The notes: a model not told the origin generated them from the sequence alone. DNA of 63,675 nt, filler included, from Octopus bimaculoides (GCF_001194135.2; 12 parts of 12 records of this genome joined end to end with filler, not necessarily neighbours in it), one strand, 5' to 3'; numbered from the whole stretch's first letter, positions 34,562 through 53,897 are shown. Numbers and translations: made by a program.

Positions 34562-34667
34562 TTACACCTGCCAAGCGCACCACTCCATGTTTGATGGATC
34601 GTTTTATTGGACAGACGGTAATGCAGAAAAACAGTACACCTGGGCTGGAGGCGATGACGATTATAAG
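34562..34667 (+). CDS. Caspr-type fibrinogen-like repeat gene, exon (module 1)
   Basis: TTTCAG|...|GTAATT, 106 nt (1+105): YTCQAHHSMFDGSFYWTDGNAEKQYTWAGGDDDYK, matching the Y.C...W......W.GG part of the Caspr/NrxIV fibrinogen-like domain. Confidence 0.85.
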
Positions 34668-34775
34668 GTAATTTCTTATAATTTTATAAAAAGACTACCA
34701 TAAGTGCAGGTGTGGCTGTATGGTAAGAAGTTTGATTCCCAACCACATGGTAGATAGAAACTGAAATAAGCCCGT

Positions 34776-34846
<71 letters not shown>

Positions 34847-35764
34847 CATTATTCAGTTTATTTCAAAATTTCTTGCCAACAGAAAAAGAGCCGGTTTCTA
34901 ACTTAGATCCAAGGTCCCTTCTTTGGAATTTCAACATGAACAGAGTATTTGTGCATATATGTATATATGGACAGTATTTGGAGTGTGTGCATTTGCAGGT
35001 TTGTACGTTTTGTTTTATATGTGTATTCTCATGCATATAGTTGCATGTCTAGACATGCGAATATAAACTTAAATGATAAACTTCTGGAAAGTTTAAAACA
35101 TTTTACAGTCCCAGTGATGGCTTGGACCTGCAGTCTTCGAATCAGCTTTCTCCTTTCTGATTTTAGGCAGTGTGTTACATCTCCCACTGCCCCAATTATC
35201 ATGGGTATAAACCTGAATATTGCAATTTGGGTAGAGTAACTGCTAATTTCTCAGTAGTTCAGCGTAAGGGTTTCTTTTTCACTGCTCTTTATCCTTATTT
35301 TAACATTCTCTGGGCCGCTAATTTCCATGTGTATGTACGTACGTATGTATGCATGCATGTATATATGTATGTACGTATGTACGTATGTATGTATGCATGT
35401 ATGCGTGCATGTATATATGCATACATACATACATATATGTACGTCCCCGACTACCGCTTGAGAACCCGGTGTTGGCGCGCTTATGACCTCGTAAATCAGC
35501 GGCTCGTTAATAGAAACCGGTAGAGTAAGTACCAACCTTTTAAAAAAACTAAGAGCTGGGGTTCGTTCGACTAAAATTCTTCAAGGCACTGCCCCAGCAT
35601 GGCCGCAGTCTAATGACTGAAACAAGTAATGAGTAAATGATAAAAGATACTCTTGTCTTCAAAAATACCGATTGTTTTATTAATGATAGGATATAACGCA
35701 TCACAAGAATGGGCGAAACTACTAATAAACGCCAGCAGTCGAATACACAGAACTGAAGCACTTG

Positions 35765-35840
35765 AATTGTGTCAAGGAAAACGAAACCTTTTTGAAAAAG
35801 ATCATAATAGGTGACGAACTGTGGGTTTATGGCTCTGATA
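35765..35840 (+). mobile_element. Small mariner transposase fragment
   Basis: ENETFLKKIIIGDELWVYGSD resembles FL.RIVTGDE.WV. Confidence 0.7.
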
Positions 35841-35996
35841 GATAGATAGATAGATCACATGACAACCACGCCAACAGAGCTGGTATCTGCCTGCAGATAG
35901 TGAGAAACTTCATCCATCTAAAATGTACAGTAGTAAAATCTCACTAAGACAATTGTTAAAGTTATTAACTCTGCCGTTATTTGTTCTTCTTTTTAG

Positions 35997-36195
35997 TGCT
36001 CCTGTGGTGTGATTGGCATGTGTTACGACGTATCAAAAGGTTGTAACTGTGAAAATAACGATTTGCAAGAAACTGACTATGGCAAGATTATTAATAAAAC
36101 CCTCTTACCAATTACAAGTTTTACCAGGATGTCTAATCCCAGCAGCTATGCTCAGATCAGTTTCGGAAACATCAAATGTTCTTCCAGACAGTTTG
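35997..36195 (+). CDS. Caspr-type repeat gene, exon (end of module 1)
   Basis: TTTTAG|...|GTAAGT, 199 nt, phase 0 to 1: CSCGVIGMCYDVSKGCNCENNDLQETDYGKIINKTLLPITSFTRMSNPSSYAQISFGNIKCSSRQF, carrying the C.CG...C...CNC...D.G.....LP...G...C signature. Confidence 0.9.
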
Positions 36196-36239
36196 GTAAG
36201 TAATAAATTCCACATGTTTAAATAGCTGTTGAACCTTAT

Positions 36240-36985
36240 TGAGCAGAAGTAAACTTCTAGTTTTTGTTCTCATTCTGCTGGGTTGTGTCCCCCAATCCAG
36301 TATGCTGCTCATATCTGCACTCGGTCTGCTCAGGAGGTTGTTGTGTCCTAGCATATGTGCTGCTTCTTTTAGTTTTCGTATTTTCCAGTGGTGTTCTCTG
36401 TCTATTATTTTAACTTCATCTCAAAGGGGGAGGTGGTCTCCATTTTTCCATACATGATTTATCAATATCTCCTCGTGTCACAGCTTTGGGATGTTCGTCT
36501 ACCCTTATTTTGAGGGGGCGACATGTTTCGCCTTTGTATAACCTACCACAGCTGCATGGGATGGAGTACACGCAGTTTTTGTTCATATTCTCTTCTATTG
36601 GTGGTTTTACTCGAAGGATATATTTGCGAAGTGTTGTATTACTCTTGAATACTGTCCTGATGTCATATGGGCCGCATATCTTTTGTATCTTTTCGGAGAG
36701 GCCTTTCACATAGGGTAGACAGACTGTGGACAGATTATTGGCCTCATCTTCTCTCTTCTTCATAATTGGAGTGGATAGCATACTTTTGGGGTAGTTGTTG
36801 CTCAACAGATCGTTATTGAGCTTGATCATTTCTTCGTGGGATGTATCACGATCGCTACTTATATTTTTTGCACGATGTTTTAGGCACTGAGCAATCCCTC
36901 TCTTTACATCGTATGGCTGGTGGGAATTGAAGTTGAGGTATCGTCCAGTAATGGTCGACTTGCGGTATACGGATGTCCAAGCAAT
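36240..36985 (-). mobile_element. 5'-truncated Penelope/Poseidon-type element (RT thumb + GIY-YIG) in an intron
   Basis: YRKSTITGRYLNFNSH...LPYVKGLSEKI...VYSIPCSCGRLYKGETCRPLKIRVDEH, then HHWKIRKLKEAAHMLGHNNLLSRPS. Confidence 0.9.
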
Positions 36986-37164
36986 GACCTGAATAATAAT
37001 AATAATAATAATAACAACAACATCGAAAAATACCTTTGGAATGAGAACCCAGGTTCGAAATTTCCCCCAAGACACCTGATGAAGGCTGGAGGGTATATCA
37101 GCCGAAACGTTGTGTTAACAACAAACAAGATGAGGACAAACATCCGTCAAATGTAAATAATGTA
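36981..37164 (+). mobile_element. Inverted terminal-repeat segment ((AAT)n + HHR + tail) fused to the truncated PLE ORF
   Basis: Same sequence as 17290-17463, joined directly to the 5'-truncated end of the minus-strand ORF. Confidence 0.85.
37071..37116 (+). ncRNA. Minimal type I hammerhead ribozyme (intact core)
   Basis: GACAC CTGATGA A GGCTG GAGGGTATAT CAGCC GAAAC GTT GTGTT, with a perfect GGCTG/CAGCC stem II. Confidence 0.8.
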
Positions 37165-37311
37165 CTGTTTATAATAGTTTCTTTCTGAGAAACATCTGAC
37201 AGGGACTTATGAGGTAAAAATATAAGGCTTTGCTCAGAACGCCGATGGATCGCGTGACTGTTTTATCCTGATAACTTATTTTCTTACATGAATTGTTCCC
37301 CTTTCTTCCAG

Positions 37312-37477
37312 ATATCCCAAAGGATTGTCACGAAATGAAGTTTAAACAATACCAGTCACTTAACGTCACTGCGTACATTGACATTGACGGGGAGCTGGAT
37401 CGATTTCCTCCTATTTTGGTGTATTGTGACATGTCATCAGAAAAGCACGTTGGTATTACAACTGTGTCCAACGACTG
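37312..37477 (+). CDS. Caspr-type repeat gene, exon (start of module 2)
   Basis: TTCCAG|...|GTAATT, 166 nt, phase 1 to 2: (D)IPKDCHEMKFKQYQSLNVTAYIDIDGELDRFPPILVYCDMSSEKHVGITTVSND(W), with the C.E...ID.DG....P..VYC.M motif. Confidence 0.9.
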
Positions 37478-37533
37478 GTAATTCTTATTGTTTATTTTCT
37501 TCCACTTTCTACTATTAATGATGCAATATGCTG

Positions 37534-37564
<31 letters not shown>

Positions 37565-39018
37565 TAATGTTGTTGTTGTTGTTGCTGCTGTTTTTGTTGC
37601 TGTTGTTGTTGTTGTTTAACCTCAATTCAGCTATAATCAGAATCGGTACCACGCAGGACAAAATGCTTGGCAGCATCAGATTTCAACTTCTGATTTCAAA
37701 CGCCGCTGGCGTCAAACCTTCGCATGAAACTGTTGTCCTTGTACCAAACTCTGAAACCAGTAATTAAACGTGCAGCAATAATGTCCTTTCTGCCTTTTCT
37801 AGTGCTTCCCCTTTTTTTATATTCCTCAATCCCAATGCAACCTTGATTCTGTAGATTTATCTTTTACTTGTCTCAGTCATTGGACTGCAGCCATACTGAG
37901 GTACAGCCTTTAAACGTTTTTAGCTGAACAGATAGACCCCAATACTTAAGTTGTTGTTTTTTAAAGTCAGATATTTATTCTATCATTCTCTTTCCCGAGT
38001 CGCTAAGTTATGCAAATATAAACAAACCAATTCCGGTTGGTAAGCCGTGATAAATACTGACACAAAAACACAAACACATAGGCATATACATGTGTGCGTT
38101 TGTGTATAACGAGCTTCCATACAGCTGTCGCCTTCCACATTTTCTGACATGACGTTAGTCGGTCTAGGGCTATAGTGGAAGCTAGTTACCTAAGGTGCCG
38201 CACAAAACAAAACTGAACAGAGACCAGGTGGTCTTTGAACGAACTTCTTAACCACACAGCCAGTGATCAAAACTGCTCCACCAATGACTGTCTTGTATTT
38301 TCTAAAGCTACTGGAAAACGCCTCGTCCAGTTTGAGTCACAGAGTTATAAAACAGAGCGGACGGAATTCGTGGAGGAAAGAACCCTGTCATGGAAGACAA
38401 GCAAATCGGAAAAGACAACAAAACATGGTTGTTTTTTAAGCTTGTCGGAGTTATGTCCCTTGTGTTGATTTCTGGCCATTTCAAAGATGCGTCTACCTTT
38501 AATATAATTATCTAGCAAAACCGGTGTGACAACATGTGTGATAATGCTATACTTTTGTGAATTACATGCACAATCTACCCGACAAACAGCCATGCAGTTT
38601 CTACTTGCCGAATTTCACTTACAAAACATGGGTCAACTCAAGGCTGTAGAAAGTTAAGTTTTTTCCCAAGATGCCAGATAGGGAGATCGGATTTGGACCC
38701 TTGGCTTGGAAACTAACTTCTTAACTATTCATCCATTCTGTGCCTTTGTAGCAATTACATTTATTGTAATTAACACATTTCTTAATTAACTAATTTTTCT
38801 ACACGATTTTGGTTCCCGGTTAATACTCCTTTCAATCTATTTTTCACTCATGATTGTCAGACATAGATGTTAGACGGCCTATTTCTTCTTCTAAATTATA
38901 CAGGAGTGGATTTCCTTTACCCCTAACTGCAGCAGGATTGGTCTCCTGCTAATCAATAAATATTTATCCTTTAATCCTCTTTACAAATCTGACACGTTTT
39001 TGTTTTATTTCTTTATAG

Positions 39019-39142
39019 GATTACCATAAAAGAAGTTGTTACACATGATTTCGACATCAACTATTATATGCAACAGGAAATGATTGCGTCGTTAATCAAT
39101 TCATCGCATTTTTGCATGCAGGACATGTCATATATATGTAAG
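39019..39142 (+). CDS. Caspr-type repeat gene, exon (module 2 middle)
   Basis: TTATAG|...|GTAATT, 124 nt, phase 2 to 0: ITIKEVVTHDFDINYYMQQEMIASLINSSHFCMQDMSYICK, with the LI..S..C.Q...Y.C motif. Confidence 0.88.
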
Positions 39143-40272
39143 GTAATTAACAATTTCTAATTAATAGCGCTTTTATATCTAGCTCGTAGCTATGGCATGT
39201 TAGCGTGTAGCTGCAGTTAAATATATTGAGATCATTTCAAAGATGTGGCAATAGAATTTACCAAAGGCTTGTAATAAAGTGGGTTTCGTTTAAAACATCT
39301 TTACATTTATACCTGTTCCCTAACTCATAGTCATCAGAACGCTACCAGCTGACCAAAAGCAAAAAACAGTACTTTCAACATATTTCCGCAGTCTCCGTCA
39401 ACCAGACTTCGACAGGTCACATTTTGGACGTGCCAGCCAGCGGTCATTCAAAGACTTGTCTTATAAGTTTTCCATGGCCGCAGTTTAATGACTGAAACAA
39501 GAGAAAGTTAAAAAATACAAGATGAAAGTTTTTCAAAGTTAAATGTGAGCAGGAACGATTGTGCGGCCAAGAATTTATCTTTTTGTGTTCAATCCAATTG
39601 CCTGGCATATTTGGCATATTTTACCATAGACTCGGAACAAGGAAATCCTTGAAAACAAAATATGGTGGACGGAAACTATGTGGAAGCCTGTTAAAGCCTG
39701 TTTTTGTTTTGGGGGAGTAGGTTTTATCCGACGCTAATTTGAATACAATCTGAAGAAAACAATGAGAAACCTTGAGAATCTGTCTACTTTTAGACCCTAC
39801 TCAAAGACAACGTGTTCGGTTGCATCTCAAACATTCAATAAGTTACGGAACATGAATAAAGATCCTTTATCTTGTTTCAGTCATTCAGACTGCGGCCATG
39901 CTGGAGCACAGCCTTGAAGAATTTTAGTCAAACGAATCGATAACATCGGTAATCAACTGGTGGCAGGGGACAAACAGACACAAAGACGCGTTATCGCACG
40001 CACACGCACACATATACATACATACATTCTTTTATTATTTTACTTGTTTCGGTCACTTCACTGTGGCCATAGTGGAACACCGCCTTAAGGGGGTTTAAGT
40101 CAAACAAATCGACCCCTGGACTTATTCTTTGTAAACCTAGTACTTTTTCTCTCGGTCACTTTTCCCGAACCGCAGAGTTACGAGGACATAAGTACACCAG
40201 CATTGGTCGTCAAGCAATGGAGGTGGGGAAGGCAAACACAGACACACACACACAAATACATACACACACACA

Positions 40273-40306
<34 letters not shown>

Positions 40307-40333
40307 AATACATACACACACACACACACACAT

Positions 40334-40371
<38 letters not shown>

Positions 40372-40629
40372 GTATTTATATACACATATATATACATATA
40401 TATACGACGGGCTTCTTTCGGGTTCTTTCTCCCAAATCCACTCACNNNNNNNNNNNNNNNNNNNNNNNNNNNNNNNNNNNNNNNNNNNNNNNNNNNNNNN
40501 NNNNNNNNNNNNNNNNNNNNNNNNNNNNNNNNNNNNNNNNNNNNNNNNNNNNNNNNNNNNNNNNNNNNNNNNNNNNNNNNNNNNNNNNNNNNNNNNNNNN
40601 NNNNNNNNNNNNNNNNNNNNNNNNNNNNN

Positions 40630-40693
<64 letters not shown>

Positions 40694-40799
40694 TAAATGT
40701 AAGGATAAGCAAGGTAGGTAGGTAGGTCGATGTACAAAGAATATTAAATGAGTTAAATAAAAAATGTATATGTTTACATACAAAAAGGTTCAACTAACA

Positions 40800-41930
40800 C
40801 AGAATAAAAACGATATCAAGAATTAAAGGGGTTGAAGAAGAGTACTACAAACCCAACAGCTGTTTCTGAGAGCTCGGTGGTCCAAATTAATTATTGTAAA
40901 TTGGTTCCATCGTCGGATGTTACGAGCCTCCGTCTTCAAGGAAGAAACATTATATTTGAGGTGTTGAAAGAAAGGAGATTTAAGATGGAATGATTTTGTG
41001 GAGAGCTAAGTGTATTAGGGGGGAGAATTGGGGAGATATTGAGATAGAGAATAATGAAAGGAGGGTATAAATTTCAAGTGTTAGATGTTAATAAGGAGAC
41101 TAGTAGGGAGTTAAGATAGTAGAGGTGGAAAGTAGGAGGAAGAGGGGAGGGTGGTTTATGTAGTATGTGAATGGTAACGTTTGTGTTAGTTTGTATGAAG
41201 GTTATAGAATTAATGGTTGAGATAGTGAAAAAGGGAATAGCCATCATTTGAGGGAAATATGTTGACTGGTTCAGTGGCTGAGGTAGATTATTAAAGGATT
41301 ATTGAAGTATGTAGAGAGGTATAAGGGAAGATAGAAGGGGAGTTGTTTGATCAATATAGCAGTTGTTAGTGGGGCAAATGAACAGGGTTTGTGCTGGAGA
41401 GGGAGTGCCATGGTATGCAGAGGTGTAGGAAATTGAATAGAGGGATGTGAATAGGGAGGCGGTAGATGTTGACAGGTTAATATCAAGGGTAGGAGTAGTA
41501 TTAAGTACTTTTTGTGAGGAGGAGATATAGGAGGGTAGTTAGGAGGGTGGGAAGGTGGGGATGCAATGCAGGAAGTGGTAAGTAGTGGTTTAGGGGAATC
41601 TCCTAATATAATAATGAGTGTAGTGTTTTTATATATTTGTATGTGTGTGTTCAAAATCACGTAGGACGGAGTAGGAGAAAGAGTTGCATAAGTGAAGTGA
41701 GAGGAGAGAAAATAGTAATTCAGTGAAGGAAAAATAGTGAGAGTAATAGCCCTGACTGAGGGGGAGTGAGAGAAAGTAATAGCAATGAGAGAAAGGAAGT
41801 GGCAAAGAGTGTGTTGCGTATCTTGTTTGTCTCCGTCACAACATATGAATGAGAAAGGAAGGGGTGAAAAAATCAGCGTTTCAACTCTGTGTGAGTATAT
41901 GTGTGTGTATGTAAAAGGGAGGTGTGTGAA
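40800..41930 (-). mobile_element. Probable PLE 3'/terminal region with a U3-variant hammerhead (40852-40942)
   Basis: Purine-skewed like 2221-3000. Minus strand reads CC TTGAAGA C GGAGGCTCG...CGAGCTCTC A GAAAC AGCT GTT GGG, with the same ACAGCTGT stem III as the 2165 HHR. Confidence 0.55.
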
Positions 41931-41963
<33 letters not shown>

Positions 41964-42023
41964 AATGGAAATAGGATGGTGAACGTTCAACGCTGAAAAG
42001 AAAAATCAGACATTTCAACTCTG

Positions 42024-42430
42024 TACATTATTTAGATTATTTACATTATTTACATTTGACGGATATTTGTCCTCATCTTGTTTGTTGTTAACACAATGTT
42101 TCGGCTGATATACCCTCCAGCATTCTTCAGGTGTCTTGGGGAAATTTCGAACCTGGGTTCTCATTCCAAAGGTATTTTTCGATGTTATTATTATTATTAT
42201 TGTTGTTGTTGTTGTTGTTATTGTTCAGATCACTGTTTGGAATCGAAATCGGAATCTTGGAGTTAGTAGCCCGCGCTCTTAACCACTACGCCATATACTC
42301 GTGGGCAATTATGGAGTGAATTTTGGGGTTTATAAATCTAATATTTTCCTATCCTTCCTTAATACCGGTTCTCATATGCTGCTCATATCTGTACTCGGTC
42401 TGCTCAGGAGGTTGCTGTGTCCTATCTATG
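42024..42430 (-). mobile_element. PLE 3' end: ORF C-terminus followed in the same orientation by tRNA head + HHR + tail
   Basis: Minus strand reads IGHSNLLSRPSTDMSSI*EPVLRKDRKILDL* (stop about 42330), then TGGCGTAGTGGTTAAGAGCGCGGGCTACTAAC, (AAC/AAT)n, a degenerate HHR at 42090-42135 and a tail ending in AATAATGTA-like repeats. Confidence 0.85.
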
Positions 42431-42567
42431 GATAGTATCGGTGGCGCAGAGAGGGGAGGTTGGTATGCATGGGCGACTACTGGTCTTCTACAAATAACCT
42501 TGCGCGGACTTGTGCTTCGAAGTGTAACTTTCTAAGTGCAATCCCATGGTCATTCAAATTCGAAGGT

Positions 42568-42624
<57 letters not shown>

Positions 42625-43789
42625 NNNNNNNNNNNNNNNNNNNNNNNNNNNNNNNNNNNNNNNNNNNNNNNNNNNNNNNNNNNNNNNNNNNNNNNNNNNN
42701 NNNNNNNNNNNNNNNNNNNNNNNNNNNNNNNNNNNNNNNNNNNNNNNNNNNNNNNNNNNNNNNNNNNNNNNNNNNNNNNNNNNNNNNNNNNNNNNNNNNN
42801 NNNNNNNNNNNNNNNNNNNNNNNNNNNNNNNNNNNNNNNNNNNNNNNNNNNNNNNNNNNNNNNNNNNNNNNNNNNNNNNNNNNNNNNNNNNNNNNNNNNN
42901 NNNNNNNNNNNNNNNNNNNNNNNNNNNNNNNNNNNNNNNNNNNNNNNNNNNNNNNNNNNNNNNNNNNNNNNNNNNNNNNNNNNNNNNNNNNNNNNNNNNN
43001 NNNNNNNNNNNNNNNNNNNNNNNNNNNNNNNNNNNNNNNNNNNNNNNNNNNNNNNNNNNNNNNNNNNNNNNNNNNNNNNNNNNNNNNNNNNNNNNNNNNN
43101 NNNNNNNNNNNNNNNNNNNNNNNNNNNNNNNNNNNNNNNNNNNNNNNNNNNNNNNNNNNNNNNNNNNNNNNNNNNNNNNNNNNNNNNNNNNNNNNNNNNN
43201 NNNNNNNNNNNNNNNNNNNNNNNNNNNNNNNNNNNNNNNNNNNNNNNNNNNNNNNNNNNNNNNNNNNNNNNNNNNNNNNNNNNNNNNNNNNNNNNNNNNN
43301 NNNNNNNNNNNNNNNNNNNNNNNNNNNNNNNNNNNNNNNNNNNNNNNNNNNNNNNNNGCCTCAATCCTTCAGGGGTAGTCTGAAGCATCCAAGCAACCAG
43401 GGGATGTTTAAGTCCGGAGGCACTCCTGGGAATCACCTGTGCGGGTACCGTCTTGGGTAGAGGGCATCCAGAAACAGGTAATTTATTGTTTAAACCGTAG
43501 TTTATAATTATATTTATGTGGAGAATGGAGCAACAAATACAAGAAGAAGCAATTCTGTTGGGCTAGTTAGCCGTTGTTTTATTATGTGGAAATTATGTAA
43601 TGAGTCATTGTGGAGGTTGAGGTTATGTAATGAGTCATAGTGGATGTTATGTAATAGTCATTTACGCACGTTTCAATCTGGCCAATGGTTTGGCAGATCT
43701 CTTCAGAATGTTGAGGAGTATGTTAAGAGTTCATGGTGTGAGAGATGTAGGAGAAGTGATTAGTGGATATATTAATGTATATAGTAATT

Positions 43790-44585
43790 TTACCTTGTCC
43801 TTATTCTTAGTGCAAATTATGAAGAGTGCAGTTCGATTTTAAGTTATTTTTTTCAAAGCTACAAATTAAAAAACAGCATATTCGGCATATTTTGCTTTAT
43901 GAGTTCAATAAAGGTAATAATGCAACGGAAAGTACCAGGAATATTAATGCAGTACTTGGGGATCGGACAATAAGCGTAAGCCAGTGTCAACGGTGATTCC
44001 AGAAATTCCCAGCCGGAAACTATAGCCTAGAAGATGAGCCTCATCCTGGAAGATATGTAGAGCTCGACGAAAACGTCCTGCAAACCCTGTTGGAAGAAAA
44101 TCCCATCGTAACTATTGAAGAACTAGCACGAAAGCTTGTATTCGGTCATTCAAGCAGTCATTCAATTCAGCGCTAGAAGAAAAACGACCATAATTGGTTT
44201 CAAAGCGAAAGATGTTCTTCCATCAGGATAATGCTCAGCCACACACACAGCCTAGATGACATTCGAAAGGCTGGAGTTGTTTGAACGGGAAACGATGCCT
44301 CACCTACCATATTCGCCGGACATCTATTCCGCAGTTTTCAAAATCAATTGGACGGAAAAAATATGAATTCTGTAGACAAGGTCAGAACAGTATTGGAGGA
44401 GTATTTTTCGTCACGGACAAGTGAATTTTGGAAGAGGGGGCTTGCAAGTCTTCCAGATAGATGGAAGAGCATTGTAGAAAATGAAGGAGAGTATATTTTA
44501 TATTTAAAAAGAAGTTTGTTTATCTTAATTTTGGAAAATAAGAGAAGTATAAAAAACCGCATTATTTATGTGATGACCCAGTATA
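43790..44585 (+). mobile_element. Internally deleted mariner element
   Basis: HIRHILLYEFNKG...EDEPHPGR...EENP (HTH region), HQDNAQPH...PYSPD and FWKRGLASLPDRWKSIVENEGEY. Confidence 0.92.
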
Positions 44586-44600
44586 TACATACATACATAT

Positions 44601-44656
<56 letters not shown>

Positions 44657-44660
44657 AATG

Positions 44661-45433
44661 AACAAAGTTTAGGTTACATAGAATATGTTTGTGACATATT
44701 TCAACCGCTAATTCACTGCAGTTCCCTTGAAGAAAATGTTCTCTTACGGTAAAAAGGTGTAAAAACACTATATCCGTTCAGTGACGCCATCTATCAAGAT
44801 TCCCCAGACATCGAAGTTTCTAGCTCCTTAGCCTTAATCAATGGGAAATACCTAAGAGAAGCAACTCTGAACAGATCTTCTTTGGCTTTATTTATAGTAC
44901 AGTCAACAACGCTGACTGATTTTATAGATCAGGTCGTGGAAATTACAGAAATATCAACACCAAGCAGTGTTTAGGTATAAGCAAAGTATAGGTTAGTTAA
45001 AATATGTTTGTGACATATTTCAACTGTTAAAAGACTAATTCACTGCAGTTACCGTAGAGAAATTTTTTCACTTATGGTTAAAACTCTACTTAACGTTAAT
45101 ATTTCGGTAATTTCCACAACCTGGCGGTCTATTCGCGGAAACAAGTCAATGCTGTTGACTGTATTTTAGATAATGCTATAACTTCATGAGATCTGTTCAA
45201 AGTTGCCTCTCTTAAGTATTTTCCACTGATAAAATGTAAGGAGCTTGAAACATCGATGTCTAGGAATCCTCATAGATGGCGACACTGAACAGATATGGTA
45301 TTCTTACACCTTTTTACCGTAAGAGAAAATTTTCCCTACGGTAACTGAAGTAAATTTGCTTTTTAGCAGCTGAAATAAGCCACAAACATATTTTAACTAA
45401 CCTAAACTTTGTTTATGCCTAAACCTTGCTGGG
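44661..45433. mobile_element. Large fold-back (palindromic) MITE-like structure
   Basis: 44661-44958 pairs with the reverse complement of about 45085-45413. The segment 44959-45080 is a direct copy of the arm start. Confidence 0.8.
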
Positions 45434-46105
45434 TGCTAATTCCCAGGCCGGACATTGTGAGTGTTTATTGAGCGAAAACACCTAAAAGCTCCACGAGGCT
45501 CCGGCAGGGGATGGTGGCGAACCCTGCTGTGCTCTTTTACCACAACTTTCTCTCACTCTTACTTCGTGTTTCTGTTGTGCCTGTAATTCAAAGACTCAGC
45601 CTTGTCACACTATGTCACGCTGAATATCCCCGAGAACTACGTTAAGGGTACACGTATCTGTGGAGTACTCAGCCACTTGCACGGTAATTTCACGAGCAGG
45701 CTGTTCCGTTGATCGGATCAACTGGAACTCTGGACGTCGTAAGCGATGGAGTGCCAACAACAACAGTATATATATATATAATAGTAAATGCGTTAGCAAA
45801 TGGGGTAAAATGTAGTTAATGCATATCGCCTTTTGATTAGTAATTCTGTCGATTCTTATAGGTTGTTAGTGTAATTTTACCCATCCTTTCCAGAGTCCTG
45901 AGATGCTGGCATTGACTAAGGAATAAAGGAATAAGGATCTGTATAGATAACTAGACTCACCCAACACATTAAAAGTTCAGTCTTGCAAGGAAGTAATTTT
46001 AGGAACTAAAAACACGTATTAAACTCATATGTACCCTACATTTCCTGACTACATGTTTGTAAATCTCTAATTACATGAATAATTGTGTTTTGTATCTATT
46101 GACAG

Positions 46106-46189
46106 GAATAAGGCCATCCTGCAACGAGTACCGAAATACCGGGTCTGACAAATCCTATACATATTTAATTGATGTTGATGGTCACAAAG
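46106..46189 (+). CDS. Caspr-type repeat gene, exon (start of module 3)
   Basis: TGACAG|...|GTAATA, 84 nt, phase 1 to 1: IRPSCNEYRNTGSDKSYTYLIDVDGHK. Confidence 0.88.
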
Positions 46190-46346
46190 GTAATAAAACG
46201 AACACACAACGCTTTTTTTTTTCTGAGCCTGCTAGGTATGCATTTCAGACATACATTGGGCATGAATGGGTTGAATAGGTATTCAAAATCAATGAAAATA
46301 TTCCCAGTAGAAAAATGTGTTCTTCGTTCTGGTTATGCCATTCATA

Positions 46347-46930
46347 GCCCAGCTTGGTGTTTTCACGCAATCATCGTCTATTAGAATTTCTCTTCTAAGA
46401 CGACTGTTACCACAGCAAAGATATTTCCACATTTGAGTGTAAACAAATATATTAACTCTATACATAATTTATATACTTTATTTTATTCATACTATCACTG
46501 CTTAGAGTGCTTTGATTAATTAATTAATTAATTAATTAATTACCTAATTAACTAATTCTAACTTAACAAACTTTTGCACGCGCCAGCAAATTTATTATTT
46601 GTTGTTTATAAGTAAGCACGTTAGTTCTTAGTTGATTAAGAGCTGATGAAGTGTAATGACACAGAAACACGTCGTACAATCCGACGACGTCAATCATAAC
46701 CCAGCTTAGTGTATTTTTACACATATTGTGTATAGAAAGTATTTCTCTTTTGAAACAGATACCGCAGCGAAGTTCTATCTACATTTGAGTGCACAGGAAC
46801 GAGTTAAATATAAATGTACACTGCTTATTTTGATCATCGCTAATTATTGTTCCTTTAATTAATTAATTAATCCCAGCTTGATAAATCTTTGCACACACCA
46901 GCTAATTTATTATTTACTGTTTATATATGA
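46347..46930. repeat. Diverged tandem duplication (about 350-bp unit)
   Basis: CCCAGCTT.GTGT..., CAGC.AAG...C.ACATTTGAGTG, (TTAA)n and TTTGCAC.C.CCAGC.AATTTATTATTT each occur twice in the same order. Confidence 0.7.
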
Positions 46931-47094
46931 GAATAACAATATAAATGTAGACAGATTTATTTTAATCATCACTTCTTAATTTCTTTCATAAATATACTTC
47001 ATATATTTTAAATTCCATGAATGAAAATAATTGACCTGCTAAGAACATTTAGTAATTTTCTCAAATTTGAAAATGTATCTTTTAATGTGTTTAG

Positions 47095-47183
47095 GTGCGT
47101 TGCAACCGTTTCCGGTCTATTGTCAGATGATCGTTCAACCCCCGTATGGATCGACAATTGTTCACCACCACCTGACTAATATA
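47095..47183 (+). CDS. Caspr-type repeat gene, exon (module 3)
   Basis: GTTTAG|...|GTATGT, 89 nt, phase 1 to 0: (G)ALQPFPVYCQMIVQPPYGSTIVHHHLTNI. Confidence 0.88.
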
Positions 47184-47490
47184 GTATGTTATTCCTTCAT
47201 TATTAAACAAAACTACAGTAAATATTGTAAAACTGCGATAGATTGGCAGAATCGTTAGAGTGACAGTCAAAAAGCTTGATGTTATCACAGTTGCATATCT
47301 AAGTTGAAATTCCTCCGAAGTCCACTTTGTATTTCAACCTTCCTGGGTCGATGAAGTAAACAAGTTCAAACTGGGTCTTTCTCCAAATTAGGGCTGTGTA
47401 CCAATCTTAGAAATAATTATCATAAAGTGAAGTGCAAAGGATTGAGTTAGTAAGGTACAAGACAACTAATCGAGAAGTTGGTGGTTCGCA

Positions 47491-48171
47491 TCATCGCACC
47501 AATACTTTGTATCCAAGTAACATAGGCTACTTACCCCGTAGATAATGTATTAGCAATAATGCCACCAATATAAAACAACATGCTTCATTAGATCCCTGTA
47601 CTGAGTCCAACGTAGGCTACAACATTCTTATAACTTTCCATAAGCCGTGACACCAGTATCTAGTCGAATTCATAGAACCCCATGAACTGAGCCTCTAAAT
47701 GCAAGTCATGTTTACTTTTTGATTCGCTAAGCCTTCATTCAAGTGTTTCTCAGCAAAGAGTTTTTGAAATATAATTTGGATTCCTTGAAAAGCTTCTCCT
47801 CCAAAATCTAGTGCAAAAGTCCCTAGACCTATATTTTTGATACTCCTGTAGCGGTAGTTAGATAGTTGAATGTTCTCCCTTGCAAGAAAGATTATAGAGT
47901 AACCTCCCTTTACTAAGTTTCTCGAAGCATCTGCGTCATGAGACATGATTCTTAGTTAGTCAAGAAGTTTAGCGTTTCTCTTGGAAGTTTCTAGAATGTC
48001 TAGGATTCCATTAATAAAAACAGCTTGCTAACCTAGCTCTTCGCTTCTTAGTTGATTAGACTTAAAGCCAGCCACGTCATTCCAATGCCCGTCTATTTCT
48101 CTGCACCACATGACTGAAAACCACCACTTAGCTGTTATTTCTACATTTTCTATCTCTGAACTTTCTTGCAT
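47491..48171 (-). pseudogene. Decayed intronless ORF of unknown origin (227 codons, five internal stops)
   Basis: One frame reads MQESSEIENVEITAKWWFSVMWCREIDGHWNDVAGF...SHDADASRNLVKGG...IKNIGLGTFALDFGGE...EGLANQKV. Family not identified. Confidence 0.5.
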
Positions 48172-50534
48172 AGATTAATTCATTCAACTAGATTCTAGAT
48201 TTTGTTTATGTATCATCATCGACCAGTAAATAAAATATATATTTTATGTAGTAAATATACAGGTCCTGAATTTATTCTTCGTCTCTATATGAACTCTTGT
48301 AATAATATACACGCAGCCACATCAACACCTGGTACTGACTATATATAACCACTACACTGCTTCGTCATATCCGGCAGTGCCGGAGTATCCTGTGTAAAGA
48401 ATATATCGTCAAATGGTTACGTATTATAGAACAGACATTAGTAATGTACTATTATTTGTTATTAACTTAATTCAAACTCCGCCGTGGTTTAACTTTGTCG
48501 TTCATCTTTCCAGAGTTGAGAGAATACCATCAAATACTGGGGTTGGATGATCGACCACATGAAAAATCAATTTCATTTAATTTAATGTTACATTTTTGAT
48601 GAGAGGCATAAGCTCGGCTTTATCTAGCAACTAACTCGATTCTAGGCTAAGTTTTAGAGAGCCACACCTATATATCATTCTAAATCGAGAATCGGTCTGG
48701 TATGAAAATTAATTTTGGTTAATAAACATTGGTGAAAACCTTTGTCCATGGCAATAAGTGGATCGGAAAAACAAAAATCTTTTCACGTGGTTTCGATGCA
48801 AATCCGTTAGGTTTAGTTCGTTGATATTACTTCAAAATTCCAGTGTTTTTACAGACTTCGTATATCCTTGTAATTTTTCATGCGTACCTCTGAAGAAACG
48901 AGTACCCAGGTTTAAAAATCCATTTCCTAACTGCTCTATTGATACAATTTTCTTAAATTGCATTTGCAACTCTTTTTCTTTCCATTATACTTCTACTCGT
49001 ATGTAAAAACTTATTTTCCTATACACACACACACACATACACACGTACATACATATATATACATATAGAGAGTGTGAGAGAGAGATAGTGTGTGTGTGTG
49101 AGAGAGAGAGTGTGTGTGTGAGAGAGTGAGTGAGAGAGAGAGAGACTTTATTTGTGGATTAAGGAGGCAACCAACGGTTTTATGTAAAGAGATCTTCACA
49201 ATTGTTCAAGCGTGCCTCATACGAGTGTTAGTACTCGTCTCCATTTTGAATATAGATAGATAGATAGATAGACAGACAGATAAAAAAGAGGAAAGAATAT
49301 ACCATAACTATATATAGTTATAGTATATTCTGTTAATAATGTAGTAGAATACAGTATAAAGCTCGTCCATCTTCAGATTTAACCTTGTTATCCAGGAGTA
49401 GTATTATACGTACTTCCAAGTTTGAGTTTGGGTATCTGTCGTGTGTGAATAGATAATTGAAAAAATTGGAGATTTATTATTTTACTCACTACACTTGTTT
49501 CCACGTAACTTAGTTCTCCAGGTGTGAAGATACTTGATTATGTAATTGTTTCCTTGCATTATGAGATCTAGTTGTGTTTCCTCAGGCGATTTGTAAATAT
49601 TCTCTGTAAGTTCAAAATCCTCAGCTTCAAGAACATCATTTGTCATGACCTGAGTTTAATAGTAATCACCGAGATTATCAGGGTGTGTCGTTGTTGAAGG
49701 GACATTGGCAAACTGCTTTAAATGTGTAGATGTAGTGGGATGGTGATTCTGCTACTGTTAAAGTGGTTGCCATTTTAAAGAGATTTGTAATTTCTTTCTT
49801 TCTACTGTTAATTTGTTCTTCGTGGTTGGTAACACATGTAATTGTCCTTAGCTGACCTTTAAGATTCAATGCTCGGACACATACACGCGCACATGGACAC
49901 ACACACATACACATTCACACATATATATATATATAGTTATATATATNNNNNNNNNNNNNNNNNNNNNNNNNNNNNNNNNNNNNNNNNNNNNNNNNNNNNN
50001 NNNNNNNNNNNNNNNNNNNNNNNNNNNNNNNNNNNNNNNNNNNNNNNNNNNNNNNNNNNNNNNNNNNNNNNNNNNNNNNNNNNNNNNNNNNNNNNNNNNN
50101 NNNNNNNNNNNNNNNNNNNNNNNNNNNNNNNNNNNNNNNNNNNNNNNNNNNNNNNNNNNNNNNNNNNNNNNNNNNNNNNNNNNNNNNNNNNNNNNNNNNN
50201 NNNNNNNNNNNNNNNNNNNNNNNNNNNNNNNNNNNNNNNNNNNNNNNNNNNNNNNNNNNNNNNNNNNNNNNNNNNNNNNNNNNNNNNNNNNNNNNNNNNN
50301 NNNNNNNNNNNNNNNNNNNNNNNNNNNNNNNNNNNNNNNNNNNNNNNNNNNNNNNNNNNNNNNNNNNNNNNNNNNNNNNNNNNNNNNNNNNNNNNNNNNN
50401 NNNNNNNNNNNNNNNNNNNNNNNNNNNNNNNNNNNNNNNNNNNNNNNNNNNNNNNNNNNNNNNNNNNNNNNNNNNNNNNNNNNNNNNNNNNNNNNNNNNN
50501 NNNNNNNNNNNNNNNNNNNNNNNNNNNNNNNNNN

Positions 50535-50572
<38 letters not shown>

Positions 50573-50610
50573 CATATATATATAATTTATATTTCAATCG
50601 TGTGTTTCAG

Positions 50611-50734
50611 ACTTCTACAGTTGAATTCACTTACATTTACGCCTCTTACATTCAAGTGACAAAACTAATCTCGAACTCAGCCTACTGTTCCCAATCATTT
50701 AGATATCACTGTTCTGAAGCCCCATTACATTCAA
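50611..50734 (+). CDS. Caspr-type repeat gene, exon (module 3 middle)
   Basis: TTTCAG|...|GTAAGT, 124 nt, phase 0 to 1: TSTVEFTYIYASYIQVTKLISNSAYCSQSFRYHCSEAPLHS. Confidence 0.9.
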
Positions 50735-51305
50735 GTAAGTTTCTTTTCTTTCACCCATTTGAGATTACATATTTATCTACAGGAGAGTTTGTCTCCGTAG
50801 AGTTAGTTGGAAAAATTGATAGGGTGTCGTGTTATCGATTAAAGTGAGTCTATTCTGTAGCCATAACCAAATTCAACATCTTTATTTGAGGGACCCTCTA
50901 TGTGGTCATTTTATCTACATGAAATAGCAGCCAAATCTGACAACATACACTCCACATTTTTAAATAATGTTGTCTTAGGTACAAAAACAAGACATAATGG
51001 TCACAGACAGACTACTTCCAATTAAATATCTGCGCTATCGTTTGAGGTTAAACAACAATGATTCTCACCAACCCAATTGACGAGTTATAAATAATTTAAT
51101 AGTTCGGATATCTTAACTTACCATCTGGTCTTCAATTACGTTTAACGTCGTTCACTCCCTTGGAATGAATTCAGACCAAATTCGTTCCTTCTGAAAGCAG
51201 CGAGAGAAGTAATCCATTGAGTCGAGAGAATTTAAAGAAAAGTCATTCCTGTACTGTCACTGCATAGAAATATATTTATATCTATCAATGTGTGTCATTG
51301 TATAA

Positions 51306-51338
<33 letters not shown>

Positions 51339-51921
51339 NNNNNNNNNNNNNNNNNNNNNNNNNNNNNNNNNNNNNNNNNNNNNNNNNNNNNNNNNNNNNN
51401 NNNNNNNNNNNNNNNNNNNNNNNNNNNNNNNNNNNNNNNNNNNNNNNNNNNNNNNNNNNNNNNNNNNNNNNNNNNNNNNNNNNNNNNNNNNNNNNNNNNN
51501 NNNNNNNNNNNNNNNNNNNNNNNNNNNNNNNNNNNNNNNNNNNNNNNNNNNNNNNNNNNNNNNNNNNNNNNNNNNNNNNNNNNNNNNNNNNNNNNNNNNN
51601 NNNNNNNNNNNNNNNNNNNNNNNNNNNNNNNNNNNNNNNNNNNNNNNNNNNNNNNNNNNNNNNNNNNNNNNNNNNNNNNNNNNNNNNNNNNNNNNNNNNN
51701 NNNNNNNNNNNNNNNNNNNNNNNNNNNNNNNNNNNNNNNNNNNNNNNNNNNNNNNNNNNNNNNNNNNNNNNNNNNNNNNNNNNNNNNNNNNNNNNNNNNN
51801 NNNNNNNNNNNNNNNNNNNTACACACTGACACACATTGATATATATATATTTACAGATGCATATATATGTATATATATATATTTACACACTGACACACAT
51901 TGATATATATATATTTACAGA

Positions 51922-51959
<38 letters not shown>

Positions 51960-52196
51960 CAGGGTTGGACAGAGAGGACGAACACTTTTGAAAAATTCAC
52001 AAATTCATTAATTTTAGCTGCAAACACATTTTATTGACATCAATGTGTTTGTATTGAATTAACATTTGTCAAGATTAAGTGTCGAAAGCAACATGCATCA
52101 TTTTGTAGTTTAATGACAATTATGGCTATGTTTTGTTTGTTTGTTTGTTTTTATAATTGACCGAACAGTAATTGAATGTTAATTGTTTTGATGTAG

Positions 52197-52329
52197 CGAA
52201 TTTCGATAACAAGATTTATGGCCCAAACAATACCATGGATGATCTAACTTGTGATTGTCATTCAGATGAAAGTTGCTTAAATAATGAAAAATGCAACTGC
52301 GATGCAAACCTTGCCAGCGAAACTGACAT
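52197..52329 (+). CDS. Caspr-type repeat gene, exon (module 3 Cys-rich part)
   Basis: ATGTAG|...|GTAAGT, 133 nt, phase 1 to 2: (T)NFDNKIYGPNNTMDDLTCDCHSDESCLNNEKCNCDANLASETD. Confidence 0.88.
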
Positions 52330-52933
52330 GTAAGTAACATATTTCTTATGAAGTCTTATTTTGTCAAACTGTCATTTACATAATTCCTTTAATAGAAGAC
52401 AGACGACACTACATGCTACCGGTGTTTTAAATACGAATTAACTAAAGAAATATAGGTTTTGAGGAAACAATTGTTCGGCAGATTTGGACTATTTAATACA
52501 TTTGACTATTTGGACTATTTAATACATTTAATACATTTAATACATTTAATCATTGGATGAACAAATAGCAAAACTCCGAATTAAACAAAATTTTATATTT
52601 TTTTGTTAAGGTTATTTCTACAGATATCTAAGTTCTATAACTCTAAGTTCTATCACTTAGAGCCAGCACCGATTTTTGCTACAACGTTTCGTATCAACAT
52701 GTCAGATGTAAACAGACAATGTGATCGAAGACAGAAGTGAGATCTACTTTTATCATTATTATGTATTGCCGTATATCAATAGACTATAAGAAATTTTAAA
52801 AGTTAGTATATTTTCTGAAATAATTTGCACCGACGGTGGCACGTAATGTCAAAACTGGTCCCTATGAATGTAGAGGGATTAAATACTATAACTAAAATTG
52901 AATTAAACATTAAAAACAAAATTACGAAAATAT

Positions 52934-53118
52934 GTAGTAAAGATTGTTTGCCAACATAACATGGCTGTCCTGGTTTAGGACGAATGTTGCTGTAATTTAG
53001 CCCCAGGAGACATCGTCTCCAGCTGGCTATACGACACGATCTGTGTCCTGGGGCTAAATTACAGCAACATTCGTCCTAAACCAGGACTGATATGTTGTTG
53101 GCAAACAATCTTTTCTAC
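52934..53118. mobile_element. Hairpin derivative of the 5883/6300 family
   Basis: Perfect 42-bp stem 52967-53008/53046-53087, extended imperfectly outwards. The loop carries the family core GACATCGTCTCCAGCTGGCT...TGTG. Confidence 0.8.
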
Positions 53119-53897
53119 AAAGTATTGTTGCTGAATATCTCTCGTTGTGAGATTTAAAAATAGTAATTTACGAAAAATATGTTGCTGATTTTTTTCATTT
53201 CACAAAAGATAAGAAAATTAGTTTTCCTGGAAGAAGCCTTTCCTTTATTAAGAAAAATCAGACAACCTGGAGGAGATAGTCTCAAGGGCTGAACACAAAA
53301 GACTATTTTGTTGATCCCAGTACCTTTTTAAACACACACACACACACACAGACATACACACATACATATACACTTACAAATGACTGAAACAAGTAAAAGA
53401 GTAGAAGAGTATATTTTTATCCATTGTTTTATCCATTTCTTGTCTGTTATAAGTGTGACTGAGTCATAGAGCTTGAAAATTCTTTAAAACACATTGAATA
53501 AAAAATGACACGCAATCTCGAAACAACTGTCATTTACAAATACTCTTTCATTTCTCCCTCGAGCTCTTGGACGCTTAAGACACGTCACCATGTTTCCATG
53601 GGGTGGACTGGAGCAATATGAAGTGCAGTGCTTTGCTCAAAAGTACAATATGCCGCCCAGTTTTATAACCGAAACCAAGATCTTGCGATCGCGAGTGTAA
53701 CATCCTAACCCCTAAATACACGGGGAATAAATACTGACGATAAATATTAATTAAATATCAAAAAAAAAAATCAGAGTAACAAATATATTGTAACTTTTCT
53801 AAAGAAAATTATTTCACTGATGAAAAGAGAAAACATTTCCACCAGGCTTCCAGCCAACAGAAAATAAGTTTAAAATCTATCTATACACACACATTCA

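What the first reader, a model, noticed from the sequence alone, without database searches (positions are those of the whole stretch)
34562..52329. Gene built from tandem Caspr/Neurexin-IV fibrinogen-like modules without intervening LamG/EGF
Seen: eight canonical exons with compatible phases give the end of module 1, the first half of module 2 and most of module 3. The module 1/2 junction is direct (...GNIKCSSRQF-D-IPKDCHE...). Established: Caspr/CNTNAP/NrxIV have one such domain, flanked by EGF and LamG. Inference: this is a lineage-specific concatemer of the isolated module, probably extracellular, rather than a true Caspr orthologue. Module 3 lacks the W/WGG motif, and intron positions differ between modules, suggesting old duplications.
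Basis: partly seen in the sequence, partly recalled or inferred. Interest (0 to 1): 0.7.

Follow-up and report, generated by a model that had tools for sequence, protein, structure and literature searches.

The report
Tandem Caspr-type modules in secreted protein gene
The exons are real and belong to a giant, still uncharacterised secreted protein shared by molluscs and ribbon worms, which carries seven Caspr-type "fibrinogen-like" modules back to back; it is an old conserved gene, not a lineage-specific invention and not a Caspr gene.

Summary
Observation confirmed. Eight + strand exons (34562-52329) have canonical AG/GT sites and compatible phases. Each one matches a module profile built without this locus (E 1e-16 to 7e-5). 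Joined, they are a 100% substring of a public gene model, P0001 (UniParc UPI00071D71B0).

The module 1/2 junction (...KCSSRQF-D-IPKDCHE...) is direct. It aligns without a gap to an 8.5-kb Sepia esculenta transcript that encodes the ortholog.

- The module is the Caspr/CNTNAP "fibrinogen-like" domain family (CNTNAP2 hit, E 7.5e-7), and the gene is not a Caspr ortholog (no LamG, no discoidin domain).
- It is not lineage-specific. Orthologs in cephalopod, bivalves, gastropods and a nemertean all carry seven abutting modules between EGF repeats and a VWD/EGF/TSP1 tail.
- The window's modules 1, 2 and 3 best match positions 1, 2 and 3 in all 8 orthologs tested.

All four gaps lie in introns. Gaps 3 and 4 hide nothing coding. 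About 94 residues (the second half of module 2) are missing between E4 and E5, where gaps 1 and 2 lie. The public model bridges this with a homology-free 85-nt exon.

A confident model (pLDDT 92) resembles the procollagen C-propeptide more than fibrinogen. Function is untested; I infer a secreted matrix or mucus-type glycoprotein.

The parts
34562..34667 (+). Exon E1, module 1: (x)YTCQAHHSMFDGSFYWTDGNAEKQYTWAGGDDDYK. Starts in phase 2 and ends in phase 0.
   Evidence: AG/GT sites. Module HMM positions 111-144, E 6.9e-5. 100% identical to P0001 435-469.
35997..36195 (+). Exon E2, module 1 Cys-rich end: CSCGVIGMCYDVSKGCNCENND...LLPITSF...GNIKCSSRQF, plus one base (G).
   Evidence: AG/GT sites. 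HMM 148-215, E 1e-16. Aligns without a gap to Sepia module 1.
37312..37477 (+). Exon E3, start of module 2: (D)IPKDCHEMKFKQYQSLNVTAYIDIDGELDRFPPILVYCDMSSEKHVGITTVSND, plus TG.
   Evidence: AG/GT sites. HMM 12-65, E 1.7e-13. The junction with E2 aligns without a gap to Sepia ...CSSKPFDFPVDCHE....
39019..39142 (+). Exon E4, middle of module 2: (W)ITIKEVVTHDFDINYYMQQEMIASLINSSHFCMQDMSYICK. Ends in phase 0.
   Evidence: AG/GT sites. HMM 80-114, E 2.4e-7.
39331..39415 (+). Bridging exon of the public gene model (SSERYQLTKSKKQYFQHISAVSVNQTST+G). Probably a prediction artefact that restores the frame where the second half of module 2 should be.
   Evidence: Present in P0001 633-661. Canonical sites. 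No match to the module HMM (E 54) and none to the Sepia ortholog.
39143..46105 (+). E4-E5 interval holding gaps 40446-40629 and 42625-43357. The exons for the second half of module 2 (about 94 residues, total length 1 mod 3) are expected here and are not in the sequenced bases.
   Evidence: A direct E4-E5 join is out of frame. No HMM hit in any ORF. Pfam on the three forward frames finds only a Mos1 HTH, with no LamG or EGF.
46106..46189 (+). Exon E5, start of module 3: (G)IRPSCNEYRNTGSDKSYTYLIDVDGHK, plus G.
   Evidence: AG/GT sites. HMM 13-38, E 6e-5.
47095..47183 (+). Exon E6, module 3: (G)ALQPFPVYCQMIVQPPYGSTIVHHHLTNI.
   Evidence: AG/GT sites. HMM 41-66, E 5.9e-7.
50611..50734 (+). Exon E7, module 3: TSTVEFTYIYASYIQVTKLISNSAYCSQSFRYHCSEAPLHS, plus A. 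Its acceptor lies 76 nt after gap 3.
   Evidence: AG/GT sites. HMM 82-119, E 2.5e-10.
52197..52329 (+). Exon E8, module 3 Cys-rich part: (T)NFDNKIYGPNNTMDDLTCDCHSDESCLNNEKCNCDANLASETD, plus AT. The next exon (ISDYVTISTKSQLPITK... in P0001) lies beyond the end of the piece.
   Evidence: AG/GT sites. HMM 141-171, E 1.6e-5. P0001 residues 805-895 give no tblastn hit in the piece.

Best explanation
The piece holds the middle of a real protein-coding gene, most likely from an octopod cephalopod. That species guess rests only on the nearest relative being a cuttlefish transcript at 41-50% identity.

The gene is the ortholog of a conserved lophotrochozoan protein that has never been characterised. 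Its full form, about 2600 residues, reads: signal peptide, EGF repeats, seven directly abutting ~200-residue Caspr-type 'fibrinogen-like' modules, EGF_CA repeats, a VWD domain with a weak TIL match, more EGF_CA, a TSP1 repeat, and a C-terminal cystine-knot-like motif. The window encodes the end of module 1, the first half of module 2 and most of module 3.

Each module is a compact domain with ten conserved cysteines, which I infer form five disulfides. Its N-terminal subdomain is that of fibrinogen C domains. Its overall fold is closest to the fibrillar procollagen C-propeptide.

Inferred, not shown: the protein is secreted and acts as a large extracellular matrix or mucus-type glycoprotein. 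The VWD and cystine-knot parts would give disulfide-linked multimers. The seven-module array would give a beaded binding or spacer region.
For: Shown:
- All 8 exons have canonical sites and compatible phases, and each hits the module HMM.
- The joined peptide is a 100% substring of the public model P0001.
- P0001 is colinear with the 2604-aa protein P0002/P0151: 50% identity over the EGF repeats, module 1 and half of module 2, and 41% over module 3 and the start of module 4.
- P0151 is one uninterrupted ORF on ~8.5-kb RNA-seq contigs from 51 index blocks of sequencing-run assemblies. Two of the four listed runs are cited in Sepia esculenta larval transcriptome papers (PMC10571815, PMC11917092).
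- All eight orthologs segmented have seven abutting modules: Sepia, Pecten, Lottia, Mercenaria, Dreissena, two Babylonia proteins and the nemertean Lineus.
- Window modules 1, 2 and 3 score best against positions 1, 2 and 3 in 8 of 8 orthologs.
- EGF and VWD are found, and TSP_1 (TIL is weak and below cut-off); no LamG or F5/8C appears.
- Orthologs have only an N-terminal hydrophobic segment (absent in Lottia and displaced to residues 30-32 in Dreissena) and a conserved C..GGCG..CC..C.C tail.
- The module model has pLDDT 92.3 and pTM 0.87.
- Foldseek against procollagen III/I C-propeptides gives E 1e-7 and TM about 0.6 over the full length. Against fibrinogen-type domains it gives TM about 0.3 over about 106 residues.
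- A profile search of the PDB matches fibrinogen beta at E 7e-9 on positions 11-67 only, and collagen I C-propeptide at E 2e-6 on positions 8-116.
Against: - There is no transcript evidence for this species. A word-indexed search with 157 window residues found nothing, not even P0001, so that index gives no information here.
- The second half of module 2 is absent from the sequenced bases. The E4-E5 interval is full of transposon remnants, so a damaged copy cannot be excluded.
- Function is inferred only from the domain types. No member of the family has been studied: four searches on accession or locus names and domain terms found nothing on this family; a fifth returned one unrelated paper.
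- The cystine-knot call is by eye; Pfam did not report it.
Confidence: 0.85

Rival explanations
1. One reading: a lineage-specific concatemer made recently by copying the isolated Caspr module within one lineage.
For: The modules are only about 40% identical to one another within the window, and intron positions differ between modules. Both facts fit independent histories for the modules.
Against: The same seven-module array, in the same order, is present in a cephalopod, bivalves, gastropods and a nemertean. Window modules 1, 2 and 3 match positions 1, 2 and 3 in 8 of 8 orthologs. The array therefore predates the split between molluscs and nemerteans.
Confidence: 0.03
2. A true Caspr/Neurexin-IV orthologue whose LamG and EGF exons are hidden in the gaps or lie outside the piece.
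For: The module is homologous to the CNTNAP2 fibrinogen-like domain. Annotation pipelines name several relatives 'neurexin-4-like'.
Against: The public model P0001 and the full-length orthologs contain no LamG or F5/8C domain and no transmembrane segment. Module 1 joins module 2 directly across a fully sequenced 1.1-kb intron. Caspr has a single such domain.
Confidence: 0.01
3. A decaying copy or pseudogene of the seven-module gene. On this reading the second half of module 2 was lost through transposon activity, and the public model's bridging exon masks the damage.
For: About 94 residues are missing between E4 and E5. The interval holds a dead mariner, a 760-nt foldback element and fragments of another transposon. 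E4 and E5 cannot be spliced in frame. No transcript-derived protein from this species turned up.
Against: All eight exons are open, keep canonical splice sites and keep every conserved cysteine. Two assembly gaps (nominally 184 and 733 N) lie exactly in this interval and could hold the roughly 286 missing coding bases. In module 1 the same region takes exons of 106 and 199 nt.
Confidence: 0.1
4. A canonical fibrinogen-related (FReD/FREP-type) immune lectin gene, as expanded in molluscs.
For: There is a weak Pfam Fibrinogen_C match on the start of module 3 (E 0.012-0.063). A profile search matches the fibrinogen A subdomain.
Against: The scores (13.5-15.9 bits) are below Pfam's 22-bit cut-off. 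The similarity stops after about 60 residues. The ligand-binding P subdomain of fibrinogen-type domains is replaced by the Cys-rich CxCG...CNCD part. The fold search prefers the procollagen C-propeptide.
Confidence: 0.01

Closest known systems
Fibrinogen-like domain of Caspr/CNTNAP1-5 and Neurexin IV
   Same: It is the same domain family by sequence. It shares the conserved pattern C...Y.IDPDG...PF.V.CDM...C.Q...Y.C...W..GG...CxCG...C...CNCD...D.G...LPV...G.L.C. Tenrec CNTNAP2 582-793 matches the module HMM over its full length at 2e-64 and matches the window peptide at 7.5e-7.
   Different: Caspr has one copy, set between EGF and LamG domains in a transmembrane neuronal adhesion protein with a discoidin domain. 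Here seven copies abut one another in a secreted EGF/VWD/TSP1 protein with no LamG, discoidin domain or membrane anchor.
Fibrillar procollagen C-propeptide (Pfam COLFI; PDB 4ae2, 5k31)
   Same: It is the closest solved fold over the whole module: Foldseek E 1e-7, TM about 0.6, about 225 aligned columns. The profile matches collagen I C-propeptide on positions 8-116. Pfam COLFI is the precomputed hit on many single-module relatives.
   Different: Sequence identity is only 14-18%. There is no collagen triple helix upstream. The modules are strung along one chain rather than forming a trimer of three chains. Whether they oligomerise or bind calcium as the C-propeptide does has not been tested.
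Fibrinogen beta/gamma C-terminal domain family (angiopoietins, tenascins, ficolins, FREPs)
   Same: The N-terminal A subdomain (about 60 residues, with its first disulfide) is shared: profile E 7e-9 against fibrinogen beta.
   Different: The rest of the domain does not superpose (TM about 0.3). The window peptides fall below Pfam's cut-off.
VWD-containing multimeric secreted glycoproteins (von Willebrand factor, gel-forming mucins, SCO-spondin, zonadhesin)
   Same: The full-length orthologs share VWD, a weak TIL match, EGF and TSP1 domains and a cystine-knot-like tail. One gastropod fragment is auto-named 'zonadhesin'.
   Different: There is a single VWD rather than a D-domain series. No mucin-like or other low-complexity region was reported by the Pfam scans, though none was specifically looked for. 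The seven-module array has no counterpart in those proteins.

Membership tests
Caspr/CNTNAP/Neurexin IV | N-terminal discoidin (F5/8 type C) domain | tested here: not met
   Pfam scans of the locus's public model P0001 and of full-length orthologs P0002, P0003 and P0007 show EGF and VWD families only.
Caspr/CNTNAP/Neurexin IV | Four LamG domains, with a single fibrinogen-like domain flanked by EGF and LamG | tested here: not met
   No Laminin_G hit, nor in the three forward frames of the E4-E5 interval. There are seven abutting modules instead of one.
Caspr/CNTNAP/Neurexin IV | Single-pass transmembrane segment and cytoplasmic tail | tested here: not met
   A Kyte-Doolittle scan of five orthologs finds at most an N-terminal hydrophobic segment. 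The window itself does not reach the C-terminus.
Caspr-type fibrinogen-like domain (the domain, not the protein) | Full-length homology to the CNTNAP fibrinogen-like domain, including the CxCG...CNCD cysteine pattern | tested here: met
   CNTNAP2 and the window modules hit the same HMM. All conserved cysteines are present in the window exons. The direct hit is E 7.5e-7.
Fibrinogen_C (Pfam PF00147) | Score above the curated cut-off (22 bits) over the ~220-residue domain | tested here: not met
   Best scores are 15.9 and 13.5 bits, on positions 4-41 only.
Procollagen C-propeptide fold (COLFI) | Structural superposition over the whole domain | tested here: met
   Foldseek E 1e-7, TM 0.56-0.64, with a model of pLDDT 92. 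This shows fold resemblance only. Pfam COLFI did not score on the window peptides.
Procollagen C-propeptide fold (COLFI) | Trimerisation through interchain disulfides and a calcium site | not testable with these tools
   This needs biochemistry or a multimer model with validation.
Lophotrochozoan EGF / 7-module / VWD / TSP1 protein (unnamed; e.g. Lottia V4AG22, Pecten XP_033732371) | Colinear alignment, with each module matching the same position in the array | tested here: met
   Colinear BLASTP to the Sepia protein. Positions 1, 2 and 3 are the best match in 8 of 8 orthologs.
Lophotrochozoan EGF / 7-module / VWD / TSP1 protein | Complete seven-module array and C-terminal VWD/TSP1 part in this species | not testable with these tools
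   The piece ends inside module 3. P0001 itself stops in module 4.

The most novel reading that the evidence does not exclude
The seven-module protein could be an unrecognised, ancient spiralian extracellular polymer. In this reading the procollagen-C-propeptide-like modules drive chain association or matrix assembly, as they do in collagens. The single 'fibrinogen-like' domain of Caspr/Neurexin IV would then be a captured copy of this older, widely used module family, rather than a fibrinogen relative.
Probability: 0.15. Interest if true: 0.55.

Novelty: new variant of a known kind. Interest (0 to 1): 0.35.

Why it matters
The domain type is known from Caspr/CNTNAP, where its function is still unclear. 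The gene itself is already in public databases as an unnamed prediction, so the locus is not a discovery.

What is not in the literature I could search is the following:
- This domain forms a conserved seven-copy array in a giant secreted protein across molluscs and a nemertean.
- Tandem arrays of the domain recur in many animal phyla.
- The fold looks more like the procollagen C-propeptide than like fibrinogen.

This gives a second, non-neuronal setting in which to study what the Caspr-type domain binds. It also flags a systematic mis-naming of such proteins as 'neurexin-4-like' or 'contactin-associated protein-like'.

Tried and rejected
- Pfam on the window peptides gave only sub-threshold Fibrinogen_C.
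- phmmer of the window peptide against PDB sequences found nothing.
- A word-indexed protein search with 157 window residues found nothing. Only the exhaustive HMMER search found the family.
- I first considered the ORF at 44753-44971 (KTLYPFSDAIYQD...) as a possible end-of-module-2 exon. I rejected it because it has no HMM hit and lies inside a 760-nt self-complementary foldback element.
- I examined ORFs at 48199-48467 as a candidate E7 and rejected them because the phases did not fit and there was no motif. The real E7 lies just after gap 3.
- Repeat finder output was swamped by N runs and microsatellites, so I replaced it with a self-blastn.
- The look-up of encoding contigs had no record for P0001.
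- Literature searches by ortholog accessions and locus names, and by COLFI or CNTNAP2 terms, found nothing relevant.
I redid the scan with X in place of stops.
- I did not predict a two-module structure, so the geometry between modules is unknown.
Full report
**What the piece is.** The usable piece is 34158-54250. It is 36% G+C, rich in microsatellites, and has four N runs. It is eukaryotic genomic DNA, with short exons separated by introns that carry transposon remnants.

**The exons.**
- Reading the DNA with its three frames and then checking every boundary by script gives eight + strand exons.
- Their coordinates are E1 34562-34667, E2 35997-36195, E3 37312-37477, E4 39019-39142, E5 46106-46189, E6 47095-47183, E7 50611-50734 and E8 52197-52329.
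- Each has an AG acceptor behind a pyrimidine-rich tract and a GT donor.
- All six junctions that can be tested keep the frame, and the joined sequence has no stop codon.

**More than chance.**
- I built a module HMM from 259 homologous modules, leaving out the model of this locus, and scored each exon peptide alone.
- All eight exons hit it in the right order along the profile, with E-values from 1e-16 to 6.9e-5 for a search space of 944 ORF fragments.
- A scan of all 944 ORF fragments on both strands found seven of the eight exons and nothing else. E7 was missed only because my N filter dropped its ORF.
- Within the window, the two Cys-rich ends and the two module starts also match each other weakly (E 0.001 and 5e-4).

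**Homologs.**
- Pfam, PDB sequences and the word-indexed protein search were almost blank for the window peptides.
- The exhaustive HMMER search of 1.84 billion representatives gave 320 hits at E <= 0.001.
- The top hit, P0001 (895 aa, UniParc UPI00071D71B0), contains the joined window peptide as an exact 369-residue substring. P0001 is therefore the public gene model of this very locus.
- P0001 adds EGF repeats and the start of module 1 upstream of the piece. Downstream of the piece it adds the end of module 3 and the start of module 4.
- P0001 also inserts one further exon, 39331-39415, between E4 and E5.

**Orthologs.**
- The next hits are proteins of 1458 to 5886 residues from Dreissena, Pecten, Lottia (UniProt V4AG22, 'VWFD domain-containing protein'), Mercenaria, Babylonia and the nemertean Lineus. 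All are annotated 'uncharacterized'.
- P0002/P0151 (2604 aa) has no source name. It is one uninterrupted ORF on ~8.5-kb contigs assembled from sequencing runs, listed in 51 index blocks.
- Two of the four listed run accessions appear in papers on Sepia esculenta larval transcriptomes (PMC10571815, PMC11917092). P0151 is therefore an expressed cuttlefish mRNA.
- P0001 aligns colinearly with it. Identity is 50% over the EGF repeats, module 1 and the first half of module 2, and 41% over module 3 and the start of module 4. No gap falls at any of the window's exon junctions.

**The array.**
- Iterated HMM segmentation finds seven modules of about 200 residues in each of the eight orthologs. Their envelopes abut or overlap by a few residues, so there is no spacer domain.
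- Pfam places EGF-type repeats before the array. After it come EGF_CA, one VWD, a weak TIL, more EGF_CA and a TSP_1 repeat. LamG and F5/8C are absent.
- The orthologs have at most one hydrophobic segment, at the N-terminus, and share a C..GGCG..CC..C.C tail that looks like a cystine knot by eye.
- In all eight orthologs the window's modules 1, 2 and 3 score best against positions 1, 2 and 3. The seven-fold duplication therefore predates the mollusc-nemertean split.
Pecten and Lineus module 3 keep a tryptophan there (sequences). So the loop is a cephalopod trait and not a missing exon.

**The gaps.**
- No exon touches a gap, and all four gaps are flanked by simple repeats.
- Gaps 3 and 4 sit in introns E6-E7 and E7-E8. 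Since E5-E8 align to Sepia module 3 with only three single-residue indels, nothing coding is hidden there.
- Gaps 1 and 2 sit in the 6.96-kb E4-E5 interval. E4 ends in phase 0 and E5 needs one preceding base, so they cannot be spliced directly.
- Sepia residues 518-611, which form the second half of module 2 with the W..GG, CxCG and CNCD motifs, have no counterpart in the sequenced bases.
- The forward frames of the interval contain only a Mos1-type HTH, with no LamG or EGF.
- The bridging exon of the public model restores the frame but has no similarity to anything (E 54). I regard it as a prediction artefact.
- The missing exons are either in the gaps or lost. In module 1 the same region takes 106 + 199 nt, and the gaps are nominally 184 and 733 N.

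**What the module is.**
- CNTNAP2 of a tenrec (P0121) is among the hits at E 7.5e-7. Its residues 582-793 match the module HMM end to end at 2e-64. From memory, that is the region UniProt annotates as the fibrinogen C-terminal domain of human CNTNAP2.
- A 50-module alignment has ten invariant or near-invariant cysteines.
- Its profile matches fibrinogen beta and gamma, angiopoietins and tenascins only on positions 11-67 (E 7e-9 and weaker). It matches the collagen I C-propeptide on positions 8-116 (E 2e-6).
- AlphaFold2 on the alignment, with the window's module 3 as target, gave pLDDT 92.3 and pTM 0.87.
- Foldseek against the PDB ranks 17 procollagen I/III C-propeptide chains first (E 1e-7 to 1e-6, TM 0.56-0.64, about 225 columns). 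Fibrinogen-type domains follow far behind (E about 0.01-0.1, TM about 0.3, about 106 columns).
- The 'fibrinogen-like' label therefore fits only the N-terminal subdomain.
- The target sequence included 11 residues of the doubtful bridging exon (pLDDT 65) and 43 residues that lie outside the piece.

**Wider distribution.**
- The same module occurs in tandem in several other proteins, none of which shows a LamG hit:
  - a flatworm EGF protein;
  - sturgeon and shark proteins with the order Xlink-CUB-SRCR-2 modules;
  - a hemichordate SRCR protein and other hemichordate proteins;
  - starfish and brittle-star proteins;
  - Lingula proteins;
  - newt proteins.
- It occurs singly behind an Ig domain in hundreds of coral proteins.
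- Several of these are auto-named 'neurexin-4-like' or 'contactin-associated protein-like'.

**Function.**
- Nothing has been tested experimentally for any member. Searches by accession or locus names and by domain terms found nothing relevant.
- From the signal peptide, the purely extracellular domain types, the VWD domain and the cystine-knot-like tail, I infer a secreted, disulfide-multimerising matrix or mucus-type glycoprotein. The seven-module array would be a beaded binding or spacer region.
- This is inference from domain types only.

**Verdict.**
- 'Not a Caspr orthologue' and 'old duplications' are right. 'Lineage-specific concatemer' is wrong.
- The locus is an already predicted, uncharacterised member of a conserved family, so interest is moderate to low.
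- The reusable points are the conserved seven-module architecture and the collagen-C-propeptide-like fold of the Caspr-type domain.

Noticed in passing
window 43823-44605 (+): Remnant of a mariner/Mos1-type transposase in the E4-E5 interval. Pfam HTH_48 scores E 1.4e-19, and the frame is broken by several stops.
   Followed up: partly
window 44658-45416 and 52933-53119: Two self-complementary (foldback or MITE-like) elements. The first is 72% self-complementary over 789 aligned columns and sits directly after the mariner remnant. The second is 85% over 194 columns. The first contains the 73-codon ORF that at first looked like an exon.
   Followed up: partly
window 36416-37075 (-), with copies at 42042-42213 and 42375-42424: A 219-codon ORF in intron E2-E3 with a GIY-YIG-like motif by eye (NCVYSIPCSCGRLYKGETCRPLKIRVDEH), which suggests a Penelope-like element. 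Pfam gave no hit. A 173-nt stretch recurs inverted at 94% identity, and a 50-nt stretch recurs direct at 96%, in the E4-E5 interval.
   Followed up: partly
window 35562-35626 and 39871-39936: A 66-nt repeat at 92% identity in inverted orientation, probably a SINE-like element, present in two different introns.
   Followed up: no
window 40446-40629, 42625-43357, 49947-50534, 51339-51819: Every assembly gap is bordered by TA, CA or GA/CT microsatellite, which is probably why the assembly broke there.
   Followed up: yes
related proteins P0017, P0249, P0299, P0304: Proteins from newt, coral, Saccoglossus and Lingula are auto-named 'neurexin-4-like' or 'contactin-associated protein-like'. The coral protein shows only Ig-type Pfam families besides this module; the others are 179-486-residue proteins or fragments, the newt one holding two tandem modules. 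The names look like systematic mis-annotation.
   Followed up: partly
related proteins P0020, P0021, P0023, P0029, P0038: Sturgeon and shark proteins, some named 'versican core protein-like', have the order Xlink, CUB, SRCR, then two tandem Caspr-type modules at the C-terminus. This vertebrate architecture contains no LamG.
   Followed up: no
P0001 residues 1-140 versus 141-335 (outside the piece): The public model starts without a methionine. It appears to carry two copies of the N-terminal EGF block where the Sepia protein has one after its signal peptide. This could be a real duplication or a model or assembly artefact.
   Followed up: no
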